A stretch of DNA of 64,000 nt from the IMG/VR virus record IMGVR_UViG_3300031787_007614, positions 124,001-188,000 of that record; one strand, given 5' to 3'. This document shows positions 3,093 through 18,829 of the stretch, piece after piece. A program made the translations under genes and the position numbers. Under the pieces are notes generated by a model. That model made no database searches. It was not told where the DNA came from and saw nothing but the letters and a program-made list of their open reading frames with translations. The first letter of the stretch is position 1; each line of letters begins with the position of its first letter.

Positions 3093-3664
3093 CGAGTCAC
3101 TTGGCTGATGTGATCACAGATACCCAGCCGCAGGGCATCATCCGCACCCAAATAAACGTCATGCGGTGGCAACAGATGTTGCTTGATTTGGTCTTCGCTT
3201 AGACCTGTACAATCTATATAATGCTGTACCATGCGTTTTTGTGTGAGCTCAAACTCTTTAATTGTGGCCAATAGTTCATGATGTTTGCCATCACTGCCCC
3301 AGGCATACTGGTGACTCATGATTGACGTATTAGGAGTGAGTGTTCTGCGTCCTGGTGTTCCTGCCAAAAAGATCAACAATCCGGCACTGGCAATTTGCCC
3401 CAGCCCCACAGCTTTGATTGGAATGACCGAACTGCGCATGACATCAATCAAGGCAAATGCTGAACTCATGTCTCCACCTTCTGAGCAAATCATTAGCAAG
3501 AGTTCTTTGCGTTTTTTCTTGGCCACAAAGTTCTCGTGCAGGATCCATTCAATTATGGGTTTGATGTTATCATCATCAACCTCGCCCATAAAAACATACA
3601 TTCCAGCGTCGGCCAAGGCTTGGGTGTGAGTCTGCTCAATTTGTAGGGAGTTATCTGTGGTCAT
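3089..3664 (-). CDS. clpP: Divergent second ClpP-family protease
   Basis: CSEGGD, GLGQIASAG (Ser), MSHQY (His), HDVYL (Asp) are colinear with ClpP. Confidence 0.85.
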   Translation of the reverse strand: MTTDNSLQIEQTHTQALADAGMYVFMGEVDDDNIKPIIEWILHENFVAKKKRKELLLMICSEGGDMSSAFALIDVMRSSVIPIKAVGLGQIASAGLLIFLAGTPGRRTLTPNTSIMSHQYAWGSDGKHHELLATIKEFELTQKRMVQHYIDCTGLSEDQIKQHLLPPHDVYLGADDALRLGICDHISQVTR

Positions 3665-3714: not shown

Positions 3715-4554
3715 TTATTGCAGGGTAATTTGTCCAACCACTGCATTAGGCTTGGCCAATGCTTCTGCTCGTTTGCGCTTGTATTCCTCATTGTCCACGT
3801 CCAGTAATTTTAGTTCACCTTGTGTGGTGCTTACTACACTAGGAGCCGGTTTTGGTTCCGTTTCCACTTTTACAGGTTCAATTCGACTTTGCGGAACCAA
3901 GCTACGTTCAAGATTGGCATCAGTATCTTGCTGAGTTTTGCGCTCAACTGCTTCGTTACGATCCATGTTTTGTTCAGCGGCCCGACTGCGGATTTCAAGT
4001 TCGCGTGTCAACTGAGTTTGTTCTCGTCGAGTTTGAATTGTGTTTGCGGCTCCAAGGGGCAGACGCAACAACACATAGACCTTGTAGTACTGCCCGTCAT
4101 GGGTGGCTTGACTGTCTACCCGTTGAGCTCCACTCAACTCACCATTGGCATTCTTGCGAGTGACCTGCTGGAAGTTTTCAACCAGAGCTTGGCCACGATC
4201 AGATCTAAAGTTATTGGTCTGTGTGGTAATACGAGCATACATCTGCTCAATCAACTTGCGTTCAGCTGCCATACGAGCTTTGTCGTAGGCCATTTGTTCG
4301 TCTGTGCTGACTGCTGTACCAGCCGCAAAGGTCATCTCTGCGGTATCTTCAGGCAGGCGTACAAACCATTCTGGCGCACGGGGTATCACACGCTGAGGCT
4401 GGGCTGGCATGGCATACGGATGTACCGGGGCTTGATACACTTGTGGTGCTGGTTGTGCTACCACCTGTGGCACGGGCACTTCGGCTTTTTGAGCACTGGC
4501 ACAAGCCACAAGACCGGCACTGATTGCCACAACAGAAAGTTTAACGAGTTTCAT
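3715..4554 (-). CDS. Lipoprotein (LPP20-like) with coiled-coil C-terminus
   Basis: Signal peptide and lipobox GLVAC; AAAGG SD before MKLVKL. Confidence 0.75.
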   Translation of the reverse strand: MKLVKLSVVAISAGLVACASAQKAEVPVPQVVAQPAPQVYQAPVHPYAMPAQPQRVIPRAPEWFVRLPEDTAEMTFAAGTAVSTDEQMAYDKARMAAERKLIEQMYARITTQTNNFRSDRGQALVENFQQVTRKNANGELSGAQRVDSQATHDGQYYKVYVLLRLPLGAANTIQTRREQTQLTRELEIRSRAAEQNMDRNEAVERKTQQDTDANLERSLVPQSRIEPVKVETEPKPAPSVVSTTQGELKLLDVDNEEYKRKRAEALAKPNAVVGQITLQ

Positions 4555-4586
4555 ACACACCTTTCAGGTTAGTTAACGGATAAAGC

Positions 4587-4615
4587 ATTGTAGCAGATTG
4601 ATTAAAATTTGTCAA
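4587..4615 (-). promoter_or_regulatory. sigma70-type promoter TTGACA-17-TACAAT
   Basis: -35 at 4615-4610, -10 at 4592-4587. Confidence 0.8.
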
Positions 4616-5162
4616 CCACTATCCACTTTGCATCTTGCATTTGGCAAATGATTCCTTGTACCACAGCAATGTCTTGTGCTTGGAATTCAGTATCCAAAAA
4701 CCAACGGCACCGAGCGCCGTTGTGCCAAAACTCTCTATTGCGGTCTGGATGCGGTCTAAACTGGCTTACCAGGCCCACTGTGCCCACTGTGGTCTTTCGA
4801 ATTGTTTGGTGTTCGGGTCTATCCGAACACACCACAACGGATTCTGTAGCTACAGACGTTTGTCCGCTTCGACTTTGCACTTCTGCTTCTGCTCGAGTTA
4901 GTGCAATATTGCATGCTGACTGTTCGGATTGAGAAAGATCAAAAGACTGGTCACCGTGAGCAGTAAGCCACTGGTTTCCAATCCTTGCACGGAAACTCAC
5001 AATGCATCGTTTCTTTCCATTAATTTCTGGAGTTACAGTCTGTGTCAACGCAGATCTCTCAAGTATCTGCGCACGACCATTAGTGGCTGTTTTGCTTTGT
5101 AAAACGCATTCACCGGCTGCTACTGCCGCAGGTAACATGAGAGCAATGACTAGTTTTTTCAT
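4602..5162 (-). CDS. Secreted Cys-rich hypothetical protein
   Basis: Signal-like MKKLVIALMLPAAVAAG; ATGA overlap with the upstream gene; six Cys in the mature region. Confidence 0.75.
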   Translation of the reverse strand: MKKLVIALMLPAAVAAGECVLQSKTATNGRAQILERSALTQTVTPEINGKKRCIVSFRARIGNQWLTAHGDQSFDLSQSEQSACNIALTRAEAEVQSRSGQTSVATESVVVCSDRPEHQTIRKTTVGTVGLVSQFRPHPDRNREFWHNGARCRWFLDTEFQAQDIAVVQGIICQMQDAKWIVVDKF

Positions 5163-5515
5163 GAGCAGTGTTTTAAATGTTGCAGATTCCAATTTATCTG
5201 TTTGTTTATGGCACCAGATGCAATTTCTTGTCTGCGTTGATAGCCGTCTGGGTCAGTTATTTGTGTCCAAAAATTGCCAATGTTTCCTAGTCCAGCAAAC
5301 AGCATCTCATCTTCTGATTGCCTCATGCTTTGCAACATCGCAATCTGTTGTTCTTTGATACGACAGTTGGGCTGGAAAAAATTTAGATCACGCTCGGACA
5401 TGGGCATGCGACTGACATTGGTAACGGCGCACCCACTACACAGGCTGACAATTGTAACGCAGAGTCCAAAGACGGTGGCGAATTTGCGATCGCTGACGTG
5501 CATAATCTTGCTCAC
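5159..5515 (-). CDS. Putative lipoprotein
   Basis: Hydrophobic stretch ending LCSGC. Confidence 0.7.
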   Translation of the reverse strand: MSKIMHVSDRKFATVFGLCVTIVSLCSGCAVTNVSRMPMSERDLNFFQPNCRIKEQQIAMLQSMRQSEDEMLFAGLGNIGNFWTQITDPDGYQRRQEIASGAINKQINWNLQHLKHCS

Positions 5516-7002: not shown

Positions 7003-7023
7003 ACTCGCGTTATATTATCATAG

Positions 7024-7054
7024 AAGCCCCGTGTAAATACTATATGGGGCTTTT
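7024..7054 (+). terminator. Hairpin AAGCCCC/GGGGCTT+TT with TAAATA promoter motif in its loop
   Basis: Arms 7024-7030 and 7046-7052; TAAATA at 7034-7039; csgF ATG at 7057. Confidence 0.65.
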
Positions 7055-7056
7055 CT

Positions 7057-7497
7057 ATGAAAACAACAATAACAACATTAGCCTTGATGCTGGTTACAGC
7101 TGGAGCCACCGCCACTGAACTAGTACATCAATTTAATTCGCCGTCGTTCAGTGGTATCGGTTACAGTAGTCACGTCCTTACAATCGAACAACTAGAGGCA
7201 ACACGCCGTCAGAAACTACGAGAAGAAGAAGCAAGCAGGATAGCCAAAGCCGAGCTTGCTGCCAAACAAACCAATATAGCTAAATTTCTAGTCAACGTAG
7301 AAAGTCGCATCTACGCTCAGTTGAGCAAACAGTTGGCAGACTCGCTGTTCAGCGGTGGGGGCACCACAGGCAGCATGGATTTCCAAGGCACCAACATCAG
7401 TTGGGTCAAAACTTCTACTGATGTAACCATGACCATTCTAGAAAGCAATGGCAATCGCACAGAGATCACTGTGCCACTAGCGAGTTTTGCATTTTGA
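7057..7497 (+). CDS. csgF: Curli assembly protein CsgF-like
   Basis: Signal peptide, then ELVHQFNSPSFSG (CsgF N-terminal F..PSF.G motif). Confidence 0.85.
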   Translation: MKTTITTLALMLVTAGATATELVHQFNSPSFSGIGYSSHVLTIEQLEATRRQKLREEEASRIAKAELAAKQTNIAKFLVNVESRIYAQLSKQLADSLFSGGGTTGSMDFQGTNISWVKTSTDVTMTILESNGNRTEITVPLASFAF

Positions 7498-8321
7498 TGA
7501 AAGCACTGTTTTTATCATTGCTGTTGGCTGTGTCTGGGTGTGCCAGTTTGGATCAAACTCAATTTGATGTACAGCCACCTCAATTGGTGCCACGACAAAA
7601 TTTGTTGGCTGTGTTGCCCGAGTTAGATGGTCCAAGAATACCTGTTGCTGTATATGGATTCATGGACAAGACTGGTCAGAAAAAAAACAACGACAAGCTG
7701 GCGTTATTTTCTACAGCGGTAACACAAGGTGCTGAAGTGTTTTTGATCAAGGCCTTGCAAGACACCCCAAACTGGTTCACAGTGGTTGAACGTGTAGGCC
7801 TGGACAACTTGATCAAAGAGCGTCAACTGATTCGCAATCAACGTGAAGTGTACGAAGGCAAAGATGCCAAGCCGCTCAAGCCTTTGTTGGTAGCTGGACT
7901 CATGATTGAAGGTGGCATCATTGGTTATGACACCAACATAACGTCTGGTGGTCGAGGAGCCAGAGTGCTAGGCATTGGTGCCAGTACTCAATATCGTGTG
8001 GACGAGATTGTGATATCCATGCGAGTGATTTCAGTCAACACTGGAGAAGTGTTGCTGAATACGGCTGTGAGCAAGACGGTGTTTAGCACAGCTCACAATC
8101 AAGGTGTTCTCAAATTTGTTGACCTTGGCACAACCAGTGTTGAACTTGAGAACGGGGCTGCTATTAACGAGCCCACCACATACGCTGTTCGAATAGCCAT
8201 CGAGCAAGCGGTGTACGAAATGATCCAAGAAGGAGCAAAACGGAAACTTTGGTCATACAAAAAGGGCACAAGCCCAAGGAGTGCGGATGAGGATAGTAAC
8301 TTGCCCACAAAACAAAAATGA
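7494..8321 (+). CDS. csgG: Curli secretion pore lipoprotein CsgG
   Basis: Lipobox VSGC; AVYGFMDKTGQ, FSTAVTQGA, WFTVVERVGLDNLIKERQLIR, EGGIIGYD. Confidence 0.95.
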   Translation: MMKALFLSLLLAVSGCASLDQTQFDVQPPQLVPRQNLLAVLPELDGPRIPVAVYGFMDKTGQKKNNDKLALFSTAVTQGAEVFLIKALQDTPNWFTVVERVGLDNLIKERQLIRNQREVYEGKDAKPLKPLLVAGLMIEGGIIGYDTNITSGGRGARVLGIGASTQYRVDEIVISMRVISVNTGEVLLNTAVSKTVFSTAHNQGVLKFVDLGTTSVELENGAAINEPTTYAVRIAIEQAVYEMIQEGAKRKLWSYKKGTSPRSADEDSNLPTKQK

Positions 8322-8944
8322 AAATAACAAGATCTCTCAAAGGGACAATATTTGCATTGAGCATGATGGCTTTATCGCATGTTCAAGCTTCAAATGAAAT
8401 TTACATAGAGCAAGTTGGTGATAATGCCACAGTGACTTTAAAACAAGCAGGCAGCAACAATACCATTGGCTCTGCCCTAGCACCGGCCTTTATTGGTGGC
8501 GGCCAAAACGTAGTTTACGTTGAACAATCTGGCAGTAGCAATCAACTGGCCATGTTGGTCAACGGCGCTGGCACTAATGTGACGTTAACAATCACAGGCG
8601 ACAGCAACCAACAGACCATCACATGCGGAACCAGCATCAGCGCCAGCTGTAGCGGATCTGCAATCACGCATACCATAACAGGTGACAACAATGATGTGCA
8701 AAGTATCCTAGGTACCAATGGTGGAGCGCATACCAGTAACATCACAGTGCTAGGTGACTACAACCATGTGACTCATAGCAGTTCAGGATCAGGCGCCAAC
8801 TCAGCCACAATCAATGTTACTGGGTCAGGCTCAGGTGCTACCCCAAATGCAATCACTGTATCACAGAGTGGTATGAATACTCAAAGTGCAACCGTCAATG
8901 CTTCGGGCAATAACATTAATATCAGTATTATTCAGTCTGACTAA
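8318..8944 (+). CDS. Curlin-repeat (CsgA/CsgB-like) secreted protein
   Basis: Signal peptide; repeated I/V-x-Q-x-G-x-x-N units (EQVGDN, KQAGSNN, EQSGSSN, ITGDSN, ITGDNN, SQSGMN). Confidence 0.75.
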   Translation: MKITRSLKGTIFALSMMALSHVQASNEIYIEQVGDNATVTLKQAGSNNTIGSALAPAFIGGGQNVVYVEQSGSSNQLAMLVNGAGTNVTLTITGDSNQQTITCGTSISASCSGSAITHTITGDNNDVQSILGTNGGAHTSNITVLGDYNHVTHSSSGSGANSATINVTGSGSGATPNAITVSQSGMNTQSATVNASGNNINISIIQSD

Positions 8945-9974
8945 TACTTGGGCTGGAGTAGGCAAGGTCACTGAACAAACTGGCCCTACTGAAATAGTAC
9001 GGGCTCGAAAAAGCATATCCAGTGCTGTAAATACCGCAGTGGAAATGAATGACACCATTGTCACAGCCCGATCCCGAGCTGAACTTACATTTGATGATGC
9101 TACCAAAGTCAAAATTACTGAACAGTCAAAGCTGATAATTGATGACTTTGTGTATGACCCAAAGTCAGGCACAGGCAAGTTGGCCATGAAAGTGGCTCTG
9201 GGCACGGCTAGATATGCATCAGGACAGATTGCCAAGAACTCTCCACAACAGGTTGCAGTCAGCACACCCACAGCTTCTATTGCTGTGCGTGGCACAGACT
9301 TTTCAATGACCGTGGACGAGCTTGGGCGCAGTCTAATAATGCTGTTGCCCAGTTGTGATGACAAAACATGTGTAACAGGTGCTATTGAAGTATCCAATCA
9401 ATCTGGTAGCATACTAATGACACAGGCCTATCAAGCTACTTTAGTTTCCACAGTAGATACACCGCCAACCAGACCAGTTGTGTTGACCATTGATCAGGCC
9501 AACATCAACAACATGCTGATCATCAGCCGGCCCCGAGAAATTAGCGAAGAACATAGAGACAACAAAAAAGATGTTCGAACAGCGTTAGACGTTAACTTTC
9601 TTGATCGAGACTTTTTAAAACCTGCAGATTTAGACAATCGGTTGGATGCATTCAACCGACTGGATCGCAATGAACTAGAAGATGAGCTGTTGCCCAATGT
9701 GTTGGATGCCGTAAATGCAGCCTTGTCGGCCACGCAAGAAGCCATGTCAACTACACTGAGCATGCTGCCAGGCTATGACGCTGGCTCAGGATTAAAATGG
9801 CGGGTAGATGATCAAGAACAGCTGGGTTTAACCAGATACAGCACTCATATTTTTGAACTAACTGTTCCCAAAGAGCAAGGGGCAATACTGGATCTCCAAC
9901 AGGACGGCATTCCTGTATATCAAAAAATCAACACAGGTGGAACCACCACAATTACCATTGTCCAAAGTCAATAA
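8898..9974 (+). CDS. FecR-domain periplasmic protein
   Basis: Signal peptide; DTIVT, AELTFDDATKVKITEQS, STPTASIAVRGTDF FecR motifs. Confidence 0.88.
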   Translation: MLRAITLISVLFSLTNTWAGVGKVTEQTGPTEIVRARKSISSAVNTAVEMNDTIVTARSRAELTFDDATKVKITEQSKLIIDDFVYDPKSGTGKLAMKVALGTARYASGQIAKNSPQQVAVSTPTASIAVRGTDFSMTVDELGRSLIMLLPSCDDKTCVTGAIEVSNQSGSILMTQAYQATLVSTVDTPPTRPVVLTIDQANINNMLIISRPREISEEHRDNKKDVRTALDVNFLDRDFLKPADLDNRLDAFNRLDRNELEDELLPNVLDAVNAALSATQEAMSTTLSMLPGYDAGSGLKWRVDDQEQLGLTRYSTHIFELTVPKEQGAILDLQQDGIPVYQKINTGGTTTITIVQSQ

Positions 9975-10001
9975 ATACTACTATAAAAATAAGGAGCCAA
10001 C

Positions 10002-10283
10002 ATGGGGGACATCTTCAAGTTAATTGGTGATCTAGGATTTCCAATAGCAGTGGCATTAGCAGGTGGATACTTTGTTTATCTCACAATCAAACTGTTGTTA
10101 GCCGGTGTACTAAGTGCAATCAAAGGCATGGCTGGCATCATCACAGCACTCGACAATCGCGTAAAGACCATGAATCATGATGTGGTTCGCATTGATACCA
10201 TTGTGTCAAATGCGCTGGGCCTCAAACCCGATGTGGATCGTATTGCACGAGCAGATGGTAAGAATGATGCAAGGAGAGATTGA
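10002..10283 (+). CDS. Small membrane/coiled-coil protein (YvrJ/holin-like), paralog of 10465..10806
   Basis: LIGDLGFPIAVA N-terminus; TAAATA at 9972-9977 and AAGGAG SD. Confidence 0.65.
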   Translation: MGDIFKLIGDLGFPIAVALAGGYFVYLTIKLLLAGVLSAIKGMAGIITALDNRVKTMNHDVVRIDTIVSNALGLKPDVDRIARADGKNDARRD

Positions 10284-10468
10284 TGTTACATCTTGATTAC
10301 AACTGGGACCTGGGCCCTGGATATATTGTGCCAGACAAAGAATTAGACACTGAAAGACTGGGCTGGAAGCCTGGACAGTTCTGGCAGATGATTGAAGTCA
10401 ATGGAAAAATAAGATTACACCAGGTGGATCCCATGGTCCAATTTGTATTGGAAGGATCTGTCAAATGA
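10280..10468 (+). CDS. Hypothetical protein
   Basis: Coupled overlaps with both neighbours. Confidence 0.65.
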   Translation: MMLHLDYNWDLGPGYIVPDKELDTERLGWKPGQFWQMIEVNGKIRLHQVDPMVQFVLEGSVK

Positions 10469-10806
10469 GCGAAGTAGTTGAACTAGTAAACAAATATGGC
10501 TTTCCTATTGTGATGGCTGTGGGCATGGGCTACATCATCAAGTATGTTTGGGAATGGGCCACAAAAGAAGTCAAACCTGTTATCAATGATGCCAACACTG
10601 TGTTGATTGCTCTCATTGACCGCGTTAGAATGTTGGACAATGATCTTATTCGTTTGAATCAAAAGGTCAACACAGTGTTGCACCTACGTGGCAAGATGAT
10701 TGAAAGTGATCGTGTGATGGAAGCACACAAAGTAGATCATGAAGCTGAAAAAACGTTCAAGAGTGTAGTGCAAGATAAAACTACTACCAAGCCAGGCGGA
10801 AGTTAA
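10465..10806 (+). CDS. Small membrane/coiled-coil protein, paralog of 10002..10283
   Basis: LVNKYGFPIVMA; ALIDRVRMLDNDLIR vs ALDNRVKTMNHDVVR. Confidence 0.65.
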   Translation: MSEVVELVNKYGFPIVMAVGMGYIIKYVWEWATKEVKPVINDANTVLIALIDRVRMLDNDLIRLNQKVNTVLHLRGKMIESDRVMEAHKVDHEAEKTFKSVVQDKTTTKPGGS

Positions 10807-10814
10807 GTACTTTA

Positions 10815-11519
10815 ATGACAGAACTAATAGCAACCCTGGTAATGACACACATTACCATAGTTTGCGTCACTTTGTATTTGCATCGTGGACAAGCTCATCG
10901 AAGTATAGAATTTCATCCCATACTCGAACACTTTATGCGAGCCTGGTTATGGCTCACAACAGGCATGGTTACCAAGCAATGGGTGGCTATACATCGCAAG
11001 CATCATAGGCACAGTGATCAACCAGGTGATCCACACAGCCCACATGTGTATGGCATCAAGAGAGTTTTCTTTAAAGGAGCAGGATTATATCATGAAGCAT
11101 CAAAAGATAAAATCATGGTTGACGCATACGGTGTTGGTACTCCTGCTGATTGGGTGGAGCTTCACTTATACACTCCTCACAGTAGACTTGGCATTGGCAT
11201 TCTCTTTGTGCTCAACACCTTGATATTTGGTTGGTGGGGCATCTTAATCTGGGGCATACAAATGATCTGGATTCCATTCTGGGCTGCAGGGGTAATCAAC
11301 GGTCTAGGTCACTGGTGGGGATATAGAAATGGTGAAACTAAAGATCACAGCAGAAACATTGTTCCTTGGGATATTATTGTTGGTGGGGAATGCCTGCATA
11401 ATAACCATCATCTGGATCCTGCTAACGCTCGACTGAGTCGTCGTTGGTTTGAGTTTGATGCAGGATGGATGTGGCTCACAGTGTTTAGAGCACTGTATCT
11501 TGCCAAATTAAGAACTTAA
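10815..11519 (+). CDS. Membrane fatty-acid desaturase (delta-9/DesC-like)
   Basis: His boxes HRGQAH, HRKHH, HNNHH. Confidence 0.92.
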   Translation: MTELIATLVMTHITIVCVTLYLHRGQAHRSIEFHPILEHFMRAWLWLTTGMVTKQWVAIHRKHHRHSDQPGDPHSPHVYGIKRVFFKGAGLYHEASKDKIMVDAYGVGTPADWVELHLYTPHSRLGIGILFVLNTLIFGWWGILIWGIQMIWIPFWAAGVINGLGHWWGYRNGETKDHSRNIVPWDIIVGGECLHNNHHLDPANARLSRRWFEFDAGWMWLTVFRALYLAKLRT

Positions 11520-11520
11520 A

Positions 11521-13569
11521 TTACTTTTCATGGGCAACAAACTCACCGTTCCAGTTGTCGCCTAGGTCCTGTTGCTTCATGAACGCACAACGTTCAATCC
11601 ACATTTTATAGTACTTGTCCATTTGCCCACCAAACTTGCCGTGCAATTCTTCACACAAGATAACAGCCGCATCAAACTGTTTTTCTTTGTATAAGGCATG
11701 CATTTTGTTGTGCGTAGCACGTTCTTTAGTATAATCCTCACCACGAGTGCGTAGCACGGTGTAGATCAAGTCTGCTACTGTTTTGCCTTTGGGTTGTAAG
11801 TTATCTAATAGCAAGTAGAAGAAGTCATCTCGAGTTCTGTTGTATGTCTCAGCACCAACAATGGCCAACACACCATAAGCCTTACAACGTGCTTCTAGTC
11901 GTGCGGCTGTTGACACCATGTCACCCAAGATGTCATAACTGTGTCGTTCTGTTGAACCCATCTCACCAATAAAGCCGACGCCTGTGTTACAGCCCCAACC
12001 CATTGCAGCTGGTGGTAAGCCCTGAGCTTCCATCTCTTTAGTGTAAGCATCTACAGCATCCAACATTTCTAATCCTACTTGAACAATAGTTCTAGCATGG
12101 TTAGGATCTTCAATTGGAGCACCGTGTATGTGCATACTCGCATCACCCACATACTTTATGACCATGCCTTTGTTGTCTAGTATAGGGCGGCTGATGCTGT
12201 CCATGTAGCCGTTCATGTACCGGCCAAGTCCAGCAACATCATCGCCGTAGTGTTCCCCAATTGGTGTAAAACCACGTAAGTCACTGAACATGACACTTAC
12301 GTCTTTACGCACGCCACGCTTGATCAAGTCTGGATCTTTTTGCAGTAGCTCTACAACTTCCTTGGAACAGTAGCCTGCAAATTGTTTTTTGATTGCTTGT
12401 TTTTGGAGGAACTCTGAGACAAACTTGACTCCGTAGGCGTGTAGCCCGACAAGGACAATGCCCGCGACTGGGAGGGTAACGTCAAATAACCAAAGGTAAT
12501 TGACAAAACTAAAGTAACTGCCATACGCAAGTACAGCGCATATTCCAACCAACGAGATAAGACCAACATACACCCACCTTGTAAGAATTAATAATAACAC
12601 GCCTGCTGCCAAGATAACAAGTATTTCAACTCCATCAGCGTAGTCTGGACGCACAATATTGGTGCCTGCTGCCACAGTTTCTAGTACACTGGCTTGCAAG
12701 TAGTGCGGATAGACTTCTCCTCTTGCAGTTGCGACGGGGTTGTTGAGCCCGCGAGCTGTGAGTCCGACAATGACAATTCCACCTTGGAAGTCCTCTGGCA
12801 AATCAGCCAGGGAGTATTCTTGCGGTTGGGATGACCAATCCACCCAAACTCTACCGTAACTGTCTGTTGGAATTTTTCCAAACTGTGGAATTCTAACTGC
12901 TTCAACGCTTCCGTCATTGACTCGGACCTGGAAGCTGGGATCTCCGGCAAGGACTCTAAGCGTTTCAAGACTGATGGAGGGATAGACTTGTTCTCCAACT
13001 GTGACGACTTGGGGGACTCGGCGTACAACGCCGTCGATTTCAGGCAAAGTGTTAACAATGCCAATGCCGCTTGCTGTTTCATTTAATGACCTCACGTTGG
13101 GTTGAATACTTTGATACGCTATGCCCGGCAAACCAGTGCCTATTACAGACACACCAGGTCTGTAAGGTGCGTACTTGGACACAGTGTTTTCGTTGGTGGC
13201 CATGTGTGGCAACACTACTAAACTCTCTTTGAGTTGCCGAGACAGTGCAGAGTCTTGCCCAAAACGATCCACATCGGGCATGAATATGTTAAACACAATC
13301 ACACCTGCATTGCGATCTTCTAACTGACGAATAATGTCAGCATACTGATTTCTGGGAAAAGGAAACTGCCCACGTTGAGCAATAGCACGGTCGTCAATGT
13401 TGACCACATGAATTTGCTCACTTGTTGTAACAGCACGATCAGTGATCAGCATGTCAAAGTAACGTAGTCTTATACTTTCTACAAAGCTAGGATCAGCAAT
13501 TCTTATACTTAAAATAAGTGCCAATGTAATTAGAGCAGTCCATGGACTTAGTAGAATTTTTTTCAACAT
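11521..13569 (-). CDS. CHASE2-domain class III adenylate/guanylate cyclase
   Basis: N-terminal TM, CHASE2 (VVNID, QFPFPR, DGVVRRVP), three TMs, cyclase FSDLRGFT / KYVGDA / GDMVSTAARLE. Confidence 0.93.
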   Translation of the reverse strand: MLKKILLSPWTALITLALILSIRIADPSFVESIRLRYFDMLITDRAVTTSEQIHVVNIDDRAIAQRGQFPFPRNQYADIIRQLEDRNAGVIVFNIFMPDVDRFGQDSALSRQLKESLVVLPHMATNENTVSKYAPYRPGVSVIGTGLPGIAYQSIQPNVRSLNETASGIGIVNTLPEIDGVVRRVPQVVTVGEQVYPSISLETLRVLAGDPSFQVRVNDGSVEAVRIPQFGKIPTDSYGRVWVDWSSQPQEYSLADLPEDFQGGIVIVGLTARGLNNPVATARGEVYPHYLQASVLETVAAGTNIVRPDYADGVEILVILAAGVLLLILTRWVYVGLISLVGICAVLAYGSYFSFVNYLWLFDVTLPVAGIVLVGLHAYGVKFVSEFLQKQAIKKQFAGYCSKEVVELLQKDPDLIKRGVRKDVSVMFSDLRGFTPIGEHYGDDVAGLGRYMNGYMDSISRPILDNKGMVIKYVGDASMHIHGAPIEDPNHARTIVQVGLEMLDAVDAYTKEMEAQGLPPAAMGWGCNTGVGFIGEMGSTERHSYDILGDMVSTAARLEARCKAYGVLAIVGAETYNRTRDDFFYLLLDNLQPKGKTVADLIYTVLRTRGEDYTKERATHNKMHALYKEKQFDAAVILCEELHGKFGGQMDKYYKMWIERCAFMKQQDLGDNWNGEFVAHEK

Positions 13570-13572
13570 CAA

Positions 13573-13707
13573 TTATTTATTGGGGGGGTTTGGAGCAGAT
13601 TCTTTGGCTTTTTGTTTAGCTTTTTCTGAAGCCGGGCTTGATCTGTGCGGAGTAGTGGGGCGGGGGGTCGAAGGATATCGGGGCGGTTTGTGCTTGAACC
13701 AACTCAT
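13573..13707 (-). CDS. 44-aa Pro/Lys-rich peptide (not in ORF track)
   Basis: MSWFKHKPPRYPSTPRPTTPHRSSPASEKAKQKAKESAPNPPNK; TAAATA at 13732-13727 and AAAGGA SD. Confidence 0.6.
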   Translation of the reverse strand: MSWFKHKPPRYPSTPRPTTPHRSSPASEKAKQKAKESAPNPPNK

Positions 13708-13762
13708 AGGCTGTGTCCTTTTGAAGTATTTAATTGAGCTCAAACATGATAAAGTTAATTGT

Positions 13763-14083: not shown

Positions 14084-15088
14084 TTACTTAATCTGACTCC
14101 ACACACGCTCGCGAATTTGCTTGGTCAACACATCAGGCAAACTCACATAGTCCAGTTCTTCAGCCATCTTCTTGCCATTCTTGAATGACCAGTTAAAGAA
14201 CTTTAGTACTTCAGCCGATGCTTTTTTATCAGCTGGGTCCTTGTACATGATAATAAAACTAGCAGTGGTCACAGGCCACACTGTGTCGCCCTTTTGGTCC
14301 ACAATACTAATGCCCATACCTGGCACTGAGAACCAGTCAGCGCCTGCAGCCGCGGCAGCAAAAGTCAAGTCATCTGGACTGACAAATTTGCCTGACTTGT
14401 TTTGCAACTGCATGAATGTCATGTTGTTCTTTTTAACATAAGCATACTCAACATATCCAATGGCACCTTTCACACGATTCACATTGGCTGCAACACCTTC
14501 GTTGCCTTTGCCGCCCACTGATGATGCAGCCGGCCATTTTACTGCGGCACCACGGCCCACTCGGCTGGCCCATTCAGGACTGACAGTTGTGAGATAGTCT
14601 GTCCAGTTAAATGTTGTGCCTGATCCATCTGCACGATGCACTACAGTGATGTTGGCATCAGGTAACTTTTTGCCGGGATTCAACGCCGCTAATTTTGGGT
14701 CGTTCCACTTCACAATGTTGCCCATAAACACTTCTGCCATCACTGCACCTGTGATTTGCAATTCACCGGGGCGGAATCCTTCCAAGTTGATCACCGGCAC
14801 TGTGCCACCAATAACAGCAGGAAATTGCACTTGTCCTAGTCGATCCAAATCTTCACCTTTTACTGGTGCATCAGTTGCACCAAAGGCCACTGTTTTGTTG
14901 TTGATCTGGCGAATGCCGCCTGATGAACCAATTGATTGATAATTAAGTCCCACGCCAGTTTCTTTCTTGTAGGCTTCAGCCCATTTAGCGTAGATAGGAT
15001 AAGGGAAAGTTGCACCTGCCCCTGTGATGTCGGCTGCTTGTGCTGTAACCGTGAAAGCGGTCAGTAGTGTCAGTAAGTGTTTGAACAT
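14084..15088 (-). CDS. pstS: Phosphate ABC transporter substrate-binding protein
   Basis: ITGAGATFPYP, YQSIGSSGG, HRADGSGTT, GKGNEGVA; AAAGGAG SD. Confidence 0.97.
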   Translation of the reverse strand: MFKHLLTLLTAFTVTAQAADITGAGATFPYPIYAKWAEAYKKETGVGLNYQSIGSSGGIRQINNKTVAFGATDAPVKGEDLDRLGQVQFPAVIGGTVPVINLEGFRPGELQITGAVMAEVFMGNIVKWNDPKLAALNPGKKLPDANITVVHRADGSGTTFNWTDYLTTVSPEWASRVGRGAAVKWPAASSVGGKGNEGVAANVNRVKGAIGYVEYAYVKKNNMTFMQLQNKSGKFVSPDDLTFAAAAAGADWFSVPGMGISIVDQKGDTVWPVTTASFIIMYKDPADKKASAEVLKFFNWSFKNGKKMAEELDYVSLPDVLTKQIRERVWSQIK

Positions 15089-15129
15089 GATTTCTCCTTT
15101 GTAGTTCACAACTATTTAGGCCGAATCAC

Positions 15130-15147: not shown

Positions 15148-15432
15148 TGTCAACATTCGGATCAACGCAATGGTGTCAATAGTCGTGAGCAACACATAGT
15201 TAGCCAACATCCCAAAACTTCTGCGAGTCCAAGCAGCCCAGGCATAGATAGCACAACCAGTGATCCACACAGGGTAAAGAGCCAGTAAGGGTGGAGTTGG
15301 TACAGTGGCTGCCATTGCAACACTGCAACCAATGCTGATAGCCCAAGCCAATACTTCCATGACAAACCTAAAAGGGTGGGTCTTGTAATCACTTTTGATC
15401 CATTCAAAGATGCCAGTTAAAATGTTGTTCAT
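15142..15432 (-). CDS. Small inner-membrane protein
   Basis: Three hydrophobic segments; ATGA overlap with the uvsE stop. Confidence 0.75.
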   Translation of the reverse strand: MNNILTGIFEWIKSDYKTHPFRFVMEVLAWAISIGCSVAMAATVPTPPLLALYPVWITGCAIYAWAAWTRRSFGMLANYVLLTTIDTIALIRMLTL

Positions 15433-16466
15433 CGAGTGGCCAGCCATTGCTGGTACAATTGATCTCGGGCCAAGTTCTTGCCTTTGGCCTCGCACTGAAT
15501 GTTGAATTGATCAGCAAATGTCAAGGCCCAGTCATTCACTGCTTCGTTCCAATAAAAGTCACTATGGGCTCGCAGTTTTTGCTTTTTGTAGCCCTGTGCC
15601 AACAGCGCACTCAAGTCAGGCTTTACTGTGCGAGAGTGGTCAACAAGGCAGTCTTCACGACTAACTGAGTAGTGTAGTGTAGGACGCACACCACGCCAAG
15701 ACTCACGAACCCGTTGCGCACGTGGGTCCGTAGGTTGGATGTATTCGCCGGTGTTGATCCAGTGGTGATGGATATCCAGCACAAGAGCCACATGATCAGC
15801 CACGGCAAGAGTAACGTCAAGTCCATTTGTAAGTTCGTCATTTTCTATAGTTATGAGATTGCGAGCCTCTGGAGACAATCTGCCCAAGGTTCGAAGAAAC
15901 TTTGCAGGGCCGCCCTTGCCCGAGAGATGTACGTTGATCTTGAATCCGTGATCATGATACGTGTTTCCATACCCCATCCACCGGGCCATATCTGCATGAT
16001 ACTCGAATTCCAGAATGGATCGTTCAACGATTTCATCCGATTCGCTTGCCAGCACACAAAATTGTCCTGGATGAAAGGAAAGCCGAACACCCAGACGCCG
16101 AGCAGCGTTGCCAACCGGCGCAAATATGCGTTCGCAATGATCTTGAATTTCACGTCGTTGCCACCAATTGATCCAAGAGGGTTCTGTATAGCCCTGTAAC
16201 ATTTCTGATCCCAAACGAACCATTCTGCGCTCGGGTTCCATTGCGCCCACACGCTCAATCATTTTTAACGCCGCGGCAGCGTTATGGTTCATGATGTCCC
16301 ACTGACGCTGGTCAGCTTCGGCGGCATGCTCACGGAGCCAGCGCATGGTGGTTGATCTTCCGTTTATATCACGGTCCACAGCATTGACTTTCATGCCCCC
16401 AGTTTCCTCGGGGTCATTGAGCCATTTGCAACAAAAGCCAAAACGCGAATGTGTAAGTGTAGTCAT
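15429..16466 (-). CDS. uvsE: UV-damage endonuclease
   Basis: RLSFHPGQF, INVH, TIENDE, VLDIHHH, RAHSD, QCEAK. Confidence 0.93.
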   Translation of the reverse strand: MTTLTHSRFGFCCKWLNDPEETGGMKVNAVDRDINGRSTTMRWLREHAAEADQRQWDIMNHNAAAALKMIERVGAMEPERRMVRLGSEMLQGYTEPSWINWWQRREIQDHCERIFAPVGNAARRLGVRLSFHPGQFCVLASESDEIVERSILEFEYHADMARWMGYGNTYHDHGFKINVHLSGKGGPAKFLRTLGRLSPEARNLITIENDELTNGLDVTLAVADHVALVLDIHHHWINTGEYIQPTDPRAQRVRESWRGVRPTLHYSVSREDCLVDHSRTVKPDLSALLAQGYKKQKLRAHSDFYWNEAVNDWALTFADQFNIQCEAKGKNLARDQLYQQWLATR

Positions 16467-18329: not shown

Positions 18330-18829
18330 AAGTGTCCTGTAATTTGTAATGTGTATCTTGGTTCAAACCCACAGTTGGCAGCCATGTGTGGCGTGTCGTA
18401 CCGCCACTCCACTGTGTCTCCTGCTCGCCAGTTTGTCATTGGTTGATCTTCATATTCGCCGTAGTGTCCAGGTTTCCAGTCTTCAAGGAATACTACTGCT
18501 CGTCTGATATGTTGTTCCTGGCCTTGCAATTTAAACAATTCAATATATTTGACATAGAGATCTTGATGAGTAGGAAGGATTGTGCCTGAACTCATTCTGT
18601 AATAGCTGGTGCCCACATCCTTCCAGCCCATTTCTTCGTAAATTTTTACAAATTGTTTGTTCCAACTGGGTTGCACTGATCGCATGTCGCACATGTCGCC
18701 AGTGAATTTATTGGCAAAGCCTTGCCCTTGCCAGAGTTCTAGATTTTTTGAATCATTGAATGTTTCATTGATATACAATAGCTGTTTAAACTCGTTATCC
18801 CAAAATTTTGGAATGTGGTATTTAAGCAT
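18326..18829 (-). CDS. 2OG-Fe(II) oxygenase-like protein
   Basis: PTHQD and distal PHMA His. Confidence 0.6.
   Translation of the reverse strand: MLKYHIPKFWDNEFKQLLYINETFNDSKNLELWQGQGFANKFTGDMCDMRSVQPSWNKQFVKIYEEMGWKDVGTSYYRMSSGTILPTHQDLYVKYIELFKLQGQEQHIRRAVVFLEDWKPGHYGEYEDQPMTNWRAGDTVEWRYDTPHMAANCGFEPRYTLQITGHL

What the first reader, a model, noticed from the sequence alone, without database searches (positions are those of the whole stretch)
7057..13569. Possible phage trans-envelope signalling relay: CsgF/CsgG pore + curlin + FecR facing a CHASE2 cyclase
Seen: csgF, csgG, a curlin-repeat gene and fecR are overlap-coupled, followed by two paralogous membrane genes and a desaturase, all converging on a CHASE2 class III cyclase. 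No csgE, csgC or csgD is in the window. Established: CsgG/F secrete curlins, csgF/G occur in some marine T4-like myophages, and FecR and CHASE2 are periplasmic sensing modules. Inference: this may be a relay from outer-membrane pore and curlin to FecR to CHASE2 to cNMP, sensing surface contact or superinfection, rather than a simple amyloid fibre system.
Basis: partly seen in the sequence, partly recalled or inferred. Interest (0 to 1): 0.82.

Follow-up and report, generated by a model that had tools for sequence, protein, structure and literature searches.

The report
Phage curli pore plus receptor cyclase
A large freshwater phage carries a conserved gene set for an outer-membrane curli-type pore, a fibre subunit, a FecR-like periplasmic protein and a membrane receptor cyclase. 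The set was already described in marine phages, its function is still unknown, and it looks more like an envelope signalling device than a plain fibre factory.

Summary
csgF, csgG, a curlin-repeat gene and a secreted FecR-domain gene are overlap-coupled. They are followed by two paralogous small membrane genes, a 61-aa ORF and a desaturase. All converge on a CHASE2 class III cyclase.

It is not chance. In related viral contigs, 44/44 csgG-anchored and 49/50 cyclase-anchored loci carry the whole set.

It is not new as a gene set. Wittmers et al. 2022 (PMC9599517) described T8SS+FecR+adenylate cyclase in pelagiphages. HTVC008M and Melnitz also carry it. This window is a new member in a large freshwater phage, with the cyclase block inverted.

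New here:
- The cyclase is a CHASE2 receptor.
- The small membrane pair belongs to the module.
- The module is two recombining blocks: csgF-csgG-curlin-fecR, and cyclase-sm1/sm3.
- The same FecR domain, cyclase and sm pair occur in other phages with a TolC/HlyD-like channel instead of CsgG/F.
- In bacteria the FecR domain and CHASE2 cyclase sit beside a TPR+beta-barrel outer-membrane protein and never beside CsgG.

The outside-in relay idea is therefore partly supported as architecture. Direct contacts, the signal (surface contact or superinfection) and the cNMP target remain untested. FecR does not co-vary with the cyclase.

The parts
7034..7042 (+). promoter-like motif TAAATACTA, 16 nt before the csgF ATG, inside the loop of a hairpin (about 7022-7056)
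   Evidence: Exact 9-mer occurs only twice in 64 kb (7034, 9972). One-mismatch copies lie before orf6733 (6710) and before the small ORF ahead of the cyclase (13732, - strand). Function inferred.
7057..7497 (+). csgF: secreted CsgF-like protein (146 aa)
   Evidence: Pfam CsgF 1.1e-14 over profile positions 3-132/132. phrog_35372 7.7e-45. Signal peptide, and a mature N-terminus with QF..P.F.G as in E. coli CsgF.
7497..8321 (+). csgG: outer-membrane lipoprotein pore (ATG at 7497; the ORF list starts at TTG 7494)
   Evidence: Pfam CsgG 4.5e-52. 4e-48 to E. coli CsgG structures over residues 4-257. Lipobox VSGC. The constriction loop differs from E. coli.
8318..8944 (+). curlin-repeat beta-solenoid subunit (208 aa, signal peptide); the only one in this window
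   Evidence: Curlin_rpt sub-threshold here, matched in 39/42 orthologues. AF2 pLDDT 88, 13 strands. Foldseek inconclusive.
8898..9974 (+). secreted FecR-domain protein (358 aa from ATG 8898; GTG 8886 also possible): FecR fold at 22-195, helical linker, C-terminal beta-sandwich at 299-356 ending in a curlin-like repeat
   Evidence: Pfam FecR 1.8e-10. AF2 pLDDT 83.9. Foldseek PupR C-terminal domain 6ovk E 4.8e-4, and 5ix9 for the C-domain. Two invariant Cys. Curlin-like terminal motif.
9972..9980 (+). second exact copy of TAAATACTA, 23 nt before the sm1 ATG
10002..10283 (+). sm1: small membrane protein (93 aa), phrog_18771
   Evidence: phrog_18771 5.5e-29. Hydrophobic stretch 7-50. Among GenBank phages, homologues occur only in the six records that also have CsgG.
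10283..10468 (+). sm2: 61-aa ORF between the paralogues, no family
   Evidence: Conserved at 34-98% identity in many related loci between sm1 and sm3. No Pfam or PHROG hit.
10465..10806 (+). sm3: paralogue of sm1 (113 aa)
   Evidence: phrog_18771 6.2e-29, weak holin phrog_4898 over the first 23 aa. Alignment A7.
10815..11519 (+). membrane fatty-acid desaturase; accessory passenger
   Evidence: Pfam FA_desaturase 7.3e-14. Present in only 14/44 and 25/50 related loci. A relative lacking it is seen in run X18.
11521..13569 (-). CHASE2 receptor class III nucleotide cyclase (682 aa from ATG 13569; the ORF list starts at TTG 13572)
   Evidence: CHASE2 1.6e-37 plus Guanylate_cyc 8.1e-15. Class III cyclase structures up to 4e-20. 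Hydrophobic segments at 3-31 and 310-385 flank CHASE2. Five of six canonical catalytic residues kept; Asn is Ser.
13573..13743 (-). small Pro/Lys-rich ORF directly upstream of the cyclase, preceded by TAAATACTT; membership uncertain
   Evidence: Weak low-complexity hits in 19 related loci. No Pfam hit.

Best explanation
This is a phage-encoded envelope module built from two blocks that always occur together but recombine independently.

Block A (csgF, csgG, curlin, fecR) builds a CsgG/CsgF outer-membrane channel in the infected cell. It exports a curlin-type beta-solenoid subunit. It also supplies a soluble, Sec-exported FecR-fold protein whose C-terminus looks like one curlin repeat.

Block B (the CHASE2 cyclase with the small membrane pair sm1/sm3) is an inner-membrane receptor. 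Its periplasmic CHASE2 domain controls a cytoplasmic class III cyclase, most likely making cAMP.

Most likely working: the FecR-fold protein sits in the periplasm at the channel or fibre. It takes the place of the missing CsgE, or is tethered to curlin. It reports the state of that export apparatus or fibre to the CHASE2 domain, so an event at the cell surface or outer membrane sets the cyclic-nucleotide level of the infected cell.

Shown: gene content, localisation signals, folds, co-occurrence, block structure and the bacterial and phage variants.
Inferred: every physical contact, the direction and nature of the signal, the nucleotide made and its target.
For: Co-occurrence: 44/44 csgG-anchored and 49/50 cyclase-anchored viral loci carry csgF, csgG, fecR and the cyclase. 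The 94 non-identical loci fall into 78 CsgG clusters at 90% identity. The same order is found in cultured HTVC008M and Melnitz.

All products are envelope proteins. Signal peptides and a lipobox are present. CHASE2 lies between hydrophobic segments with the cyclase domain behind them.

FecR fold: Foldseek matches the PupR C-terminal cell-surface signalling domain, the part that in that family docks onto an outer-membrane protein.

Independent FecR-CHASE2 linkage: 28/71 of the closest bacterial FecR-domain genes have a CHASE2 class III cyclase adjacent. 27 of those 28 also have a TPR+beta-barrel outer-membrane gene. 0/71 have csgG or csgF.

Interchangeable channel: L170 and 12 viral loci (contigs up to 172 kb) carry a giant protein with the same FecR domain (35% identity, E 4e-30). 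It sits with a TolC-like OEP, a HlyD-like protein, the CHASE2 cyclase and, in 10 of the 13, sm1/sm3, and without csgFG.

The sm1/sm3 pair belongs to the module. In GenBank phages it occurs only where CsgG occurs. It co-varies with the cyclase (r=0.56 and 0.45).

Curlin-like C-terminus of FecR: the motif is found in 2 of 341 window ORFs, namely curlin and FecR. It is found in 33/106 FecR tails and in 0 of the other cassette families. The curlin HMM gives 5 FecR hits at E<0.05 against 0 in shuffles.

Catalysis is plausible: both metal Asp, Lys and Arg are invariant in 106 phage and 28 bacterial sequences. An active class III cyclase without the Asn is on record (Ma1120, PMC4215837).

Precedent: S. 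meliloti outer-membrane NsrA is required for signalling through CHASE2 cyclases (PMC13001267, PMC7529298).
Against: FecR divergence tracks csgF/csgG (r=0.84-0.91) and not the cyclase (r=0.07-0.27, highest for the CHASE2 part). Close relatives L011-L013 keep csgF-fecR at 90% identity with a cyclase only 60% identical. A specific co-adapted FecR-CHASE2 interface is therefore not indicated, and linkage alone could explain the FecR-csgG correlation.

No complex was modelled and no experiment exists.

The transition-state Asn is Ser in the window's cyclase class (about three quarters of the sampled phage cyclases), so activity could be low or altered.

No cNMP-binding effector was found in the window or related loci (low sensitivity).

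The curlin-like tail motif was defined after seeing the two sequences.

The Foldseek match of the C-domain to 5ix9 is short (61 columns, E 9e-3).

Pieces in RNA libraries do not prove transcription.
Confidence: 0.45

Rival explanations
1. It is a working curli (T8SS) fibre system. Infected cells make amyloid fibres for aggregation ('sibling capture') or as a shield against other phages. FecR and the cyclase only regulate its expression. There is no physical relay from the pore.
For: CsgG, CsgF and a curlin-repeat solenoid with signal peptides are all present and conserved. This is the reading proposed for pelagiphages (PMC9599517, PMC7029224). Many relatives carry a second curlin gene, as with CsgA/CsgB.
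Against: CHASE2 is an extracytoplasmic input domain, so the cyclase listens to the periplasm rather than to the cytoplasm.
The same FecR domain, cyclase and sm pair occur with a TolC/HlyD-like channel and no curlin. In bacteria they occur with a TPR+barrel protein and never with CsgG.
The window has one curlin gene and no detectable CsgE/C/D.
No clumping was seen in Melnitz cultures (PMC9004378).
Confidence: 0.25
2. It is a lysis-timing or membrane-permeabilising device. CsgG/F acts as a gated outer-membrane hole, sm1/sm3 act as holin- or antiholin-like proteins, and the cyclase acts as a timer or superinfection sensor, analogous to lysis inhibition.
For: Proposed for Melnitz from modelling and synteny (PMC9004378). 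sm3 has a weak N-terminal match to holin phrog_4898 (1.2e-4). sm1/sm3 are small membrane proteins linked to the cyclase. The CsgG constriction loop differs from E. coli.
Against: Profiles of 26 sm1/sm3 members find no holin, XhlA or kinase family in Pfam or the PDB. No endolysin or spanin lies in the cassette. The bacterial FecR-CHASE2 modules have no lysis context.
Confidence: 0.1
3. It is an uptake or iron-sensing system. The ungated CsgG pore lets in nutrients or siderophores, and FecR senses iron as in Fec-type regulation.
For: Suggested in PMC9599517 and PMC7029224. No CsgE gate was detected.
Against: This FecR has a cleaved signal peptide and no anti-sigma or transmembrane segment. No TonB-dependent transducer or ECF sigma factor lies in the cassette. 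Its closest bacterial relatives sit with CHASE2 cyclases and TPR+barrel proteins, not with iron transport genes.
Confidence: 0.05
4. It is a Pycsar-like or other defence or exclusion system, in which the cyclase makes a signal that triggers a membrane effector.
For: The cyclase domain matches PycC models of PADLOC (3.6e-12). Small membrane proteins lie beside it.
Against: The PycC match is generic class III homology. No other cassette protein matches PADLOC. sm1/sm3 have no cNMP-binding domain. The cyclase carries a periplasmic sensor, unlike Pycsar cyclases.
Confidence: 0.05

Closest known systems
Pelagiphage T8SS + FecR + adenylate cyclase module (Wittmers et al. 2022, PMC9599517; HTVC008M; Methylophilales phage Melnitz; Zaragoza-Solas 2020, PMC7029224; Buchholz 2022, PMC9004378)
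   Same: Same genes in the same order: csgF, csgG, curlin, FecR, (curlin 2), cyclase. sm1/sm3 homologues lie directly upstream of csgF in HTVC008M and Melnitz. CsgE is absent. Function unknown.
   Different: Protein identity to the window is only 26-58%. The window comes from freshwater runs and 138-364 kb contigs. Its helicase is nearest to jumbo phages PA5oct and Atu_ph07 at 48%. The cyclase block is inverted, there is no second curlin, and a desaturase is inserted. The papers never mention CHASE2, the small membrane pair as such, or a TolC variant. Their 'histidine kinase, sometimes two' in front of csgF may be sm1/sm3 (inference from position only).
E. coli curli system (CsgA-G, type VIII secretion)
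   Same: CsgG lipoprotein pore aligned over its full length. CsgF with the conserved N-terminal motif. Secreted subunit with Q.G..N repeats.
   Different: No detectable CsgE, CsgC or CsgD, and only one curlin. The constriction loop is one residue longer, without the Tyr. FecR and a cyclase are not part of bacterial curli operons (PMC9599517; 0/71).
S. meliloti NsrA - CyaD1/CyaD2/CyaK (CHASE2 cyclases) - cAMP - Clr pathway
   Same: An outer-membrane beta-barrel protein is required for signalling through CHASE2 class III cyclases. A FecR-domain periplasmic protein (SMc02177) belongs to the same regulon (PMC13001267, PMC7529298, PMC5498481).
   Different: The outer-membrane partner is unrelated to CsgG. 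It is a host-plant signal pathway of a bacterium. No direct role of the FecR protein in perception was found there (PMC5498481).
FecA-FecR-FecI / PupB-PupR cell-surface signalling
   Same: The FecR-fold periplasmic domain (Foldseek 6ovk) docks in that family on an outer-membrane protein.
   Different: No cytoplasmic anti-sigma domain and no transmembrane helix. No TonB-dependent transducer or ECF sigma in the cassette. The output here would be a cyclase.
Burkholderia BiofilmReg operon and PA4035/4036 (LysM-FecR protein + CHASE2 histidine kinase; PMC5192318)
   Same: A secreted FecR-domain protein is encoded next to a CHASE2 sensor.
   Different: The output is a histidine kinase and response regulator. 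It has a LysM domain and no outer-membrane channel gene of the CsgG type.
Slam / type XI secretion, and T1SS adhesin retention modules (MpIBP RIN, 5ix9; PMC5550230)
   Same: Bacterial FecR-CHASE2 loci carry a TPR + beta-barrel protein of Slam-like build. The C-domain of the window's FecR protein resembles the periplasmic plug domain RIN. A phage variant uses TolC/HlyD-like genes.
   Different: SlipAM and TPR_Slam matches are weak (7 and 8 of 28 members, near or below cut-off). The RIN match is short. No ABC transporter was identified in the TolC variant.

Membership tests
Curli / type VIII secretion system | CsgG nonameric outer-membrane lipoprotein pore | tested here: met
   Pfam 4.5e-52. E. 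coli CsgG structures 4e-48 over residues 4-257. Lipobox present. Oligomeric state not testable.
Curli / type VIII secretion system | CsgF accessory protein with an N-terminal pore-binding segment | tested here: met
   Pfam CsgF 1.1e-14, full profile. QF..P.F.G motif after the signal peptide. Single-sequence phmmer with E. coli CsgF does not reach it.
Curli / type VIII secretion system | Secreted curlin-repeat subunit(s): major CsgA plus nucleator CsgB | tested here: inconclusive
   There is one gene. Curlin_rpt scores 16.8 bits against a 20.7 cut-off in the window, but matches 39/42 orthologues. The model is a solenoid. Foldseek to CsgA fibril 8enq is not significant. No second curlin in the window.
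Curli / type VIII secretion system | Periplasmic gate/adaptor CsgE, chaperone CsgC, regulator CsgD | tested here: not met
   phmmer of E. coli CsgE/C/D against 341 window ORFs gives nothing at E<=1. The unassigned cassette ORFs have no Pfam family. The same absence is reported for pelagiphages (PMC9599517).
Curli / type VIII secretion system | Extracellular amyloid fibre is formed | not testable with these tools
   Needs Congo red/ThT assays or cryo-ET.
FecR-type anti-sigma transducers (cell-surface signalling) | FecR periplasmic fold | tested here: met
   Pfam FecR 1.8e-10. Foldseek 6ovk E 4.8e-4 and 4m0h E 5.9e-4, probability 1.0.
FecR-type anti-sigma transducers (cell-surface signalling) | N-terminal cytoplasmic anti-sigma domain and one transmembrane helix | tested here: not met
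   The FecR fold starts at residue 22, right after a signal peptide. No hydrophobic segment passes the threshold.
FecR-type anti-sigma transducers (cell-surface signalling) | Cognate TonB-dependent transducer and ECF sigma factor | tested here: not met
   None among the cassette and flanking ORFs scanned. The rest of the window was not scanned exhaustively.
CHASE2 receptor class III cyclases (CyaD1/CyaK type) | N-terminal CHASE2 domain between membrane segments, C-terminal class III cyclase domain | tested here: met
   CHASE2 at 16-325 (1.6e-37) and Guanylate_cyc at 423-579. Hydrophobic segments at 3-31 and 310-385. Cyclase structures up to 4e-20.
CHASE2 receptor class III cyclases (CyaD1/CyaK type) | Six canonical catalytic residues (2 metal Asp, Lys + Asp/Thr for substrate, Asn + Arg for the transition state) | tested here: inconclusive
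   D431, D477, K473, D547 and the Arg are kept. The Asn is Ser in this class (motif VSTAARLE), while about a quarter of the phage copies and the bacterial ones keep Asn. An active cyclase with Ala at this site exists (PMC4215837). Activity and product not testable here.
CHASE2 receptor class III cyclases (CyaD1/CyaK type) | Adjacent FecR-domain gene | tested here: met
   Window and 93/94 related loci. 28/71 bacterial loci.
Pycsar defence | Cyclase plus an effector with a cNMP-binding domain | tested here: not met
   Only a generic PycC match for the cyclase. No cNMP-binding ORF. sm1/sm3 have no such domain.
Phage holins | Recognisable holin family next to an endolysin | tested here: not met
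   Only a weak 23-residue match of sm3 to phrog_4898. No holin family in 26 members. No lysin in the cassette.

The most novel reading that the evidence does not exclude
The core unit is a FecR-like periplasmic domain, a CHASE2 cyclase and, in phages, the sm1/sm3 pair. This unit is a portable outside-in signalling head that plugs into interchangeable outer-membrane export machines: CsgG/F with curlin, or a TolC/HlyD-like set with a giant FecR-headed protein in phages, and a Slam-like TPR+barrel in bacteria. The FecR domain stays in the periplasm, tethered through the channel to an extracellular fibre. Here the tether would be its curlin-like tail. What happens to the fibre outside the cell (contact, binding, pulling, another phage) would then be read as cAMP inside the infected cell.
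Probability: 0.3. Interest if true: 0.8.

Novelty: new member of a known kind. Interest (0 to 1): 0.55.

Why it matters
This gene set is very common in aquatic phages. More than 6,900 FecR relatives were scored in the protein search. The literature reports it at every GOV2.0 ocean station. It takes up several kilobases of phage genome, yet nobody knows what it does.

Three results turn a list of odd genes into a testable architecture:
- The cyclase is a periplasm-facing receptor.
- The FecR-like domain and cyclase recur with three unrelated outer-membrane channels.
- The module is split into an export block and a signalling block.

If the relay reading holds, phages would be giving their hosts a new sense organ during infection. 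The bacterial FecR-CHASE2 modules, whose ligands are unknown, would gain a mechanistic model. Cultured systems exist for the tests (HTVC008M/HTCC1062 and Melnitz/H5P1).

Tried and rejected
1. The large protein search with FecR was saturated by close phage relatives and gave no bacterial context. It was replaced by a genome-contig scan with an alignment.
2. Foldseek of the curlin model gave no significant PDB match (FapC E 0.02, CsgA fibril at rank 30). The fold cannot decide curlin membership.
3. The search for a cNMP-binding effector found nothing. It used phmmer with the cNMP domain of the L190 neighbour against window and locus ORFs. Sensitivity was low.
4. PADLOC gave only a generic PycC match.
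5. Rfam and tRNA scans of the window were empty, so there is no riboswitch or tmRNA as in Melnitz.
6. RNA-library contigs hold exact pieces of csgF/G, sm3 and the cyclase. The tool warns that this does not show transcription.
7. Pfam and PDB profile searches with 26 sm1/sm3 members gave nothing above noise: YvrJ in 6 members, enterocin at E 0.065. The Atlas returned only viral clusters.
8. Garnerone 2018 (NsrA) is not held in the library. NsrA is cited from later papers.
9. MW574966, the deposited HTVC023P-type genome, has no curli genes in its first 50 kb. The 'histidine kinase' of podophage cassettes could therefore not be examined.
They were re-run with permitted rows only.
11. The sigma-70 promoter scan was at chance level (16 found against 13.8 expected). 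Terminator-like sites were modestly above expectation (14 against 7.4, sd 2.6), and no terminator lies between the convergent desaturase and cyclase.
12. Chance adjacency in a hypervariable island was rejected on the synteny counts.
13. My first assumption of a T4-like pelagimyophage was dropped after the helicase search.

Full report
WHAT IS THERE

Pfam gives:
- CsgF, 7057-7497, 1.1e-14.
- CsgG, 7494-8321, 4.5e-52.
- A sub-threshold Curlin_rpt match, 8318-8944, 16.8 bits against a cut-off of 20.7.
- FecR, 8886/8898-9974, 1.8e-10.
- FA_desaturase, 10815-11519, 7.3e-14.
- On the minus strand, CHASE2 (1.6e-37) followed by a class III cyclase domain (8.1e-15), 11521-13572.

CsgG aligns over its whole length with the E. 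coli CsgG structures (4e-48) and has a lipobox. The curlin call is secured at family level. 39 of 42 orthologues match Curlin_rpt (best 2.5e-10), and the AF2 model is a 13-strand solenoid (pLDDT 88). Foldseek cannot tell it from other beta-helices.

The first four genes are overlap-coupled by 1 nt, 4 nt and 47 nt. The two 'membrane genes' are true paralogues: both hit phrog_18771 at about 6e-29 and they are 26% identical. A 61-aa ORF lies between them. The desaturase and cyclase stops are 1 nt apart. E. coli CsgE, CsgC, CsgD, CsgA and CsgB find nothing among 341 window ORFs.

WHAT GENOME

The window is phage. It encodes ribonucleotide reductase, DNA ligase, primase, a DnaB-like helicase, an exonuclease and virion proteins.

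It is not a close relative of the marine T4-like pelagimyophages. Its helicase is nearest (48%) to those of jumbo phages PA5oct and Atu_ph07. IMG/VR contigs with an identical cassette are 138-364 kb long. The DNA is held at over 90% of sampled words by freshwater and lake metagenomes from many studies.

IS IT MORE THAN CHANCE

Yes. Viral contigs were fetched around CsgG relatives and around cyclase relatives and scored by tblastn.
- All 44 csgG-anchored loci with at least 9.5 kb downstream carry csgF, curlin, fecR and the cyclase.
- 49 of 50 cyclase-anchored loci with enough flank carry csgF, csgG and fecR.
- The one exception (L092) ends 270 bases after sm1, where the inverted layout would place fecR.
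- The 94 non-identical complete loci fall into 78 CsgG clusters at 90% identity and 12 at 70%.

Cultured HTVC008M and Melnitz have the same order.

The usual layout has the cyclase on the same strand, 0-7 kb after fecR and often behind a second curlin gene. The desaturase and sm3, sm2 and sm1 then lie convergent behind it. In the window's clade and a few others the block cyclase...sm1 is inverted.

The desaturase is accessory (14/44 and 25/50 loci). A relative without it is visible in one run (joint 10722 to 11519).

ALREADY KNOWN

- Zaragoza-Solas et al. 2020 (PMC7029224) reported csgF/csgG clusters in pelagimyophages and called the function a mystery.
- Buchholz et al. 2022 (PMC9004378) proposed a role in lysis timing for Melnitz.
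- Wittmers et al. 2022 (PMC9599517) described the module as T8SS plus FecR plus adenylate cyclase, with a 'histidine kinase, sometimes two' in front of csgF in podophages. They showed it is ubiquitous in the ocean and shared between phage families.

None of these mentions CHASE2, TolC/HlyD or small membrane proteins. The gene set is therefore known, and the window is a new member in a different phage background and habitat.

THE PARTS IN DETAIL

FecR protein. It starts with a cleavable signal peptide and has no anti-sigma or transmembrane part. The AF2 model (pLDDT 83.9) has three regions:
- A confident beta domain at 22-195. It matches the C-terminal cell-surface signalling domain of PupR (6ovk, E 4.8e-4) and a Bacteroides anti-sigma factor. 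It has two invariant cysteines.
- A poorly defined helical linker.
- A confident beta-sandwich at 299-356. Its best match is 5ix9 (61 columns, rmsd 1.0, E 9e-3). That entry is the periplasmic plug domain that retains a T1SS adhesin in its TolC pore (PMC5550230). I treat this as a lead only.

The last 28 or so residues read like one curlin repeat (Q.G...VN..G...I.I.Q). A pattern written from the two sequences hits only the curlin and FecR among 341 window ORFs. It hits 33/106 FecR tails and 55/99 curlin tails, and none of 546 sequences of the other cassette families. The curlin HMM gives five FecR hits below E 0.05 against none in shuffled copies. The pattern is post hoc, so this is suggestive and not proven.

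Cyclase. Hydropathy places CHASE2 between membrane segments, with the catalytic domain behind three more. Both metal aspartates, the substrate lysine and the arginine are invariant in 106 phage and 28 bacterial sequences.

Two classes exist:
- A 'TN' class, like the bacterial enzymes, with Thr or Ser plus the canonical Asn.
- The window's 'DS' class, about three quarters of the sample, in which the second substrate residue is Asp and the transition-state Asn is Ser.

An active mycobacterial cyclase with Ala at that site is on record (PMC4215837). Activity is therefore plausible but unproven. Lys plus Asp predicts ATP as substrate, from established knowledge of class III cyclases.

Small membrane pair. 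sm1 homologues occur among 50,697 GenBank phage records only in the six that also have CsgG. In Melnitz and HTVC008M the pair sits directly upstream of csgF. That is exactly where Wittmers et al. place their 'histidine kinase, sometimes two'. I infer these may be the same genes. However, no kinase, HAMP or holin family is detectable in 26 members.

TWO BLOCKS

Pairwise protein distances over the loci show the following:
- csgF, csgG and fecR co-vary strongly (r=0.84-0.91).
- sm1 and sm3 co-vary (0.85) and follow the cyclase (0.56 and 0.45).
- The cyclase is almost uncorrelated with csgF, csgG and fecR (-0.02 to 0.27; the CHASE2 part gives the highest value with the FecR domain, 0.27).

Close relatives L011-L013 keep csgF-fecR at about 90% identity to the window but carry a cyclase only 60% identical.

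The two blocks are thus always together yet exchanged independently. This argues against a finely co-adapted FecR-CHASE2 interface. A conserved interface remains possible.

RELATIVES OUTSIDE THE CASSETTE

A scan of one genome per bacterial species with a FecR alignment returned 79 loci. Eight look like phage contigs binned into MAGs: six of them carry sm1/sm3, one has only csgF-csgG-curlin-fecR-cyclase on a contig cut before sm1/sm3, and one is a 1.6-kb fecR fragment. The other 71 are bacterial.

Of those 71:
- 28 have a CHASE2 class III cyclase next to the FecR-domain gene.
- None has csgG or csgF.
- 27 of the 28, plus 23 of the other 43, have a gene of about 490 aa immediately beside the FecR gene.

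That gene combines N-terminal TPR repeats (27/28 tested) with a C-terminal outer-membrane barrel. It shows weak SlipAM, TPR_Slam and DUF2860 similarity. The build is Slam-like, but membership is unproven. No paper in the library combines DUF560 with FecR.

One MAG contig (L170) and 12 IMG/VR viral loci (contigs up to 172 kb) carry a third version:
- A 1200-1470 aa protein headed by the same FecR domain (35% identity, E 4e-30).
- A TolC-like OEP.
- An unknown 248-aa protein.
- A HlyD-like protein.
- The CHASE2 cyclase and, in 10 of the 13 loci, sm1/sm3, without csgFG or curlin. Two loci have the cyclase but no detected sm pair, and one contig ends before the cyclase.

The constant is therefore a FecR-like domain plus a CHASE2 cyclase (plus sm1/sm3 in phages). 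The outer-membrane channel is interchangeable.

HOW IT MOST LIKELY WORKS

By domain logic the cyclase takes its input in the periplasm. FecR folds are known to dock on periplasmic parts of outer-membrane proteins (the PupR/PupB and FecR/FecA families). An outer-membrane protein upstream of CHASE2 cyclases has a genetic precedent in S. meliloti, from NsrA to CyaK/CyaD to cAMP to Clr.

I therefore favour an outside-in device (confidence 0.45). CsgG/F exports curlin. The FecR protein stands in for the absent CsgE at the channel, or is tied to curlin by its tail. It conveys the state of the channel or fibre to CHASE2, and the cyclase sets cAMP. Every contact, the signal itself and the target of the nucleotide are inferred.

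The rivals are a plain fibre system with regulators, a lysis timer, an uptake or iron system, and a defence system. They are listed with their evidence in the rival explanations.

OTHER POINTS

The exact 9-mer TAAATACTA occurs twice in 64 kb: 16 nt before the csgF ATG and 23 nt before the sm1 ATG. One-mismatch copies precede orf6733 and the small ORF ahead of the cyclase. Of 12 TAAATAC sites in the window, most lie 10-40 nt upstream of an ORF start. This looks like a phage promoter element shared by both arms.

RNA-library contigs contain exact pieces of csgF/G, sm3 and the cyclase, which is compatible with expression but does not prove it.

VERDICT

- The gene set is already published, so this is a new member of a known kind.
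- The value added here is the CHASE2 identity, the block structure, the membership of sm1/sm3 and the interchangeable-channel pattern. Together these make the function testable.

Noticed in passing
L170:5210-15362; L242-L253: A second phage cassette type. It comprises a giant FecR-headed protein (1200-1470 aa), a TolC-like OEP (PF02321, 5e-46), an unknown 248-aa protein, a HlyD_3 protein, the CHASE2 cyclase and, in 10 of 13 loci, sm1/sm3. It has no csgFG or curlin. It is found in 12 IMG/VR contigs of up to 172 kb and is not mentioned in the three phage papers.
   Followed up: partly
L171-L241 (e.g. L190:8368-13742, L201:8361-13622, L197:5857-13217): Bacterial triad: a TPR + outer-membrane barrel (Slam-like) gene, one to three FecR-domain genes, and a CHASE2 class III cyclase. 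27 of 28 cyclase-bearing loci have the barrel gene. No paper in the library links DUF560 and FecR.
   Followed up: partly
L190:13756-15231 (-): Next to one bacterial FecR-CHASE2 module lies an MscS-type channel fused to a cNMP-binding domain. It is a possible downstream effector of such modules.
   Followed up: no
window 6710, 7034, 9972 (+), 13732 (-), and 8 other sites: The motif TAAATAC lies 10-40 nt upstream of ORF starts in most of its 12 occurrences, including all four transcription units of the cassette. It is probably a phage promoter element (late-type look).
   Followed up: partly
window 7022-7056: A hairpin (GAAGCCCC ... GGGGCTTTTC) lies between orf6733 and csgF. It carries the TAAATACTA motif in its loop and ends in a T-run immediately before the csgF ATG. 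A terminator and promoter appear to be nested.
   Followed up: no
window 11521-13572 (-), residue about 554: The transition-state Asn of the cyclase is Ser (VSTAARLE) in about three quarters of the sampled phage copies. It comes together with Asp at the second substrate position. The remaining phage copies and all bacterial ones keep Thr/Ser plus Asn.
   Followed up: partly
L011, L012, L013: Mosaic relatives: csgF-fecR are 90-92% identical to the window, but sm1 is 74%, the desaturase 76% and the cyclase 60%. A recombination breakpoint lies between fecR and sm1.
   Followed up: partly
window 3715-4560 (-) and 4602-5192 (-): Two further putative envelope lipoproteins lie just upstream of the cassette (weak LPP20 and 17-kDa surface antigen matches). 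They are conserved only in the closest relatives.
   Followed up: partly
window 14084-15109 (-), 15429-16466 (-), 3089-3664 (-), 18822-20123 (-): Auxiliary genes around the cassette: PstS-like phosphate-binding protein, UvdE UV endonuclease, ClpP protease and UDP-glucose dehydrogenase.
   Followed up: no
window 7497-8321, CsgG residues about 60-75: The pore constriction loop differs from E. coli. It is one residue longer, the Tyr is missing and the Phe is kept.
   Followed up: no
window 52807-54249 (-): The replicative helicase is closest (48%) to those of jumbo phages PA5oct and Atu_ph07. IMG/VR contigs with the identical cassette reach 364 kb. The phage is probably a freshwater jumbo phage with no cultured close relative.
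   Followed up: partly
L163-L169 (MAG contigs labelled Flavobacteriaceae, Luteolibacter, Pelagibacter, Rhodobacteraceae, Pirellulales): Contigs carrying the full phage cassette, most with sm1/sm3, are filed inside bacterial MAGs of very different phyla. This is most likely phage DNA mis-binned.
   Followed up: no
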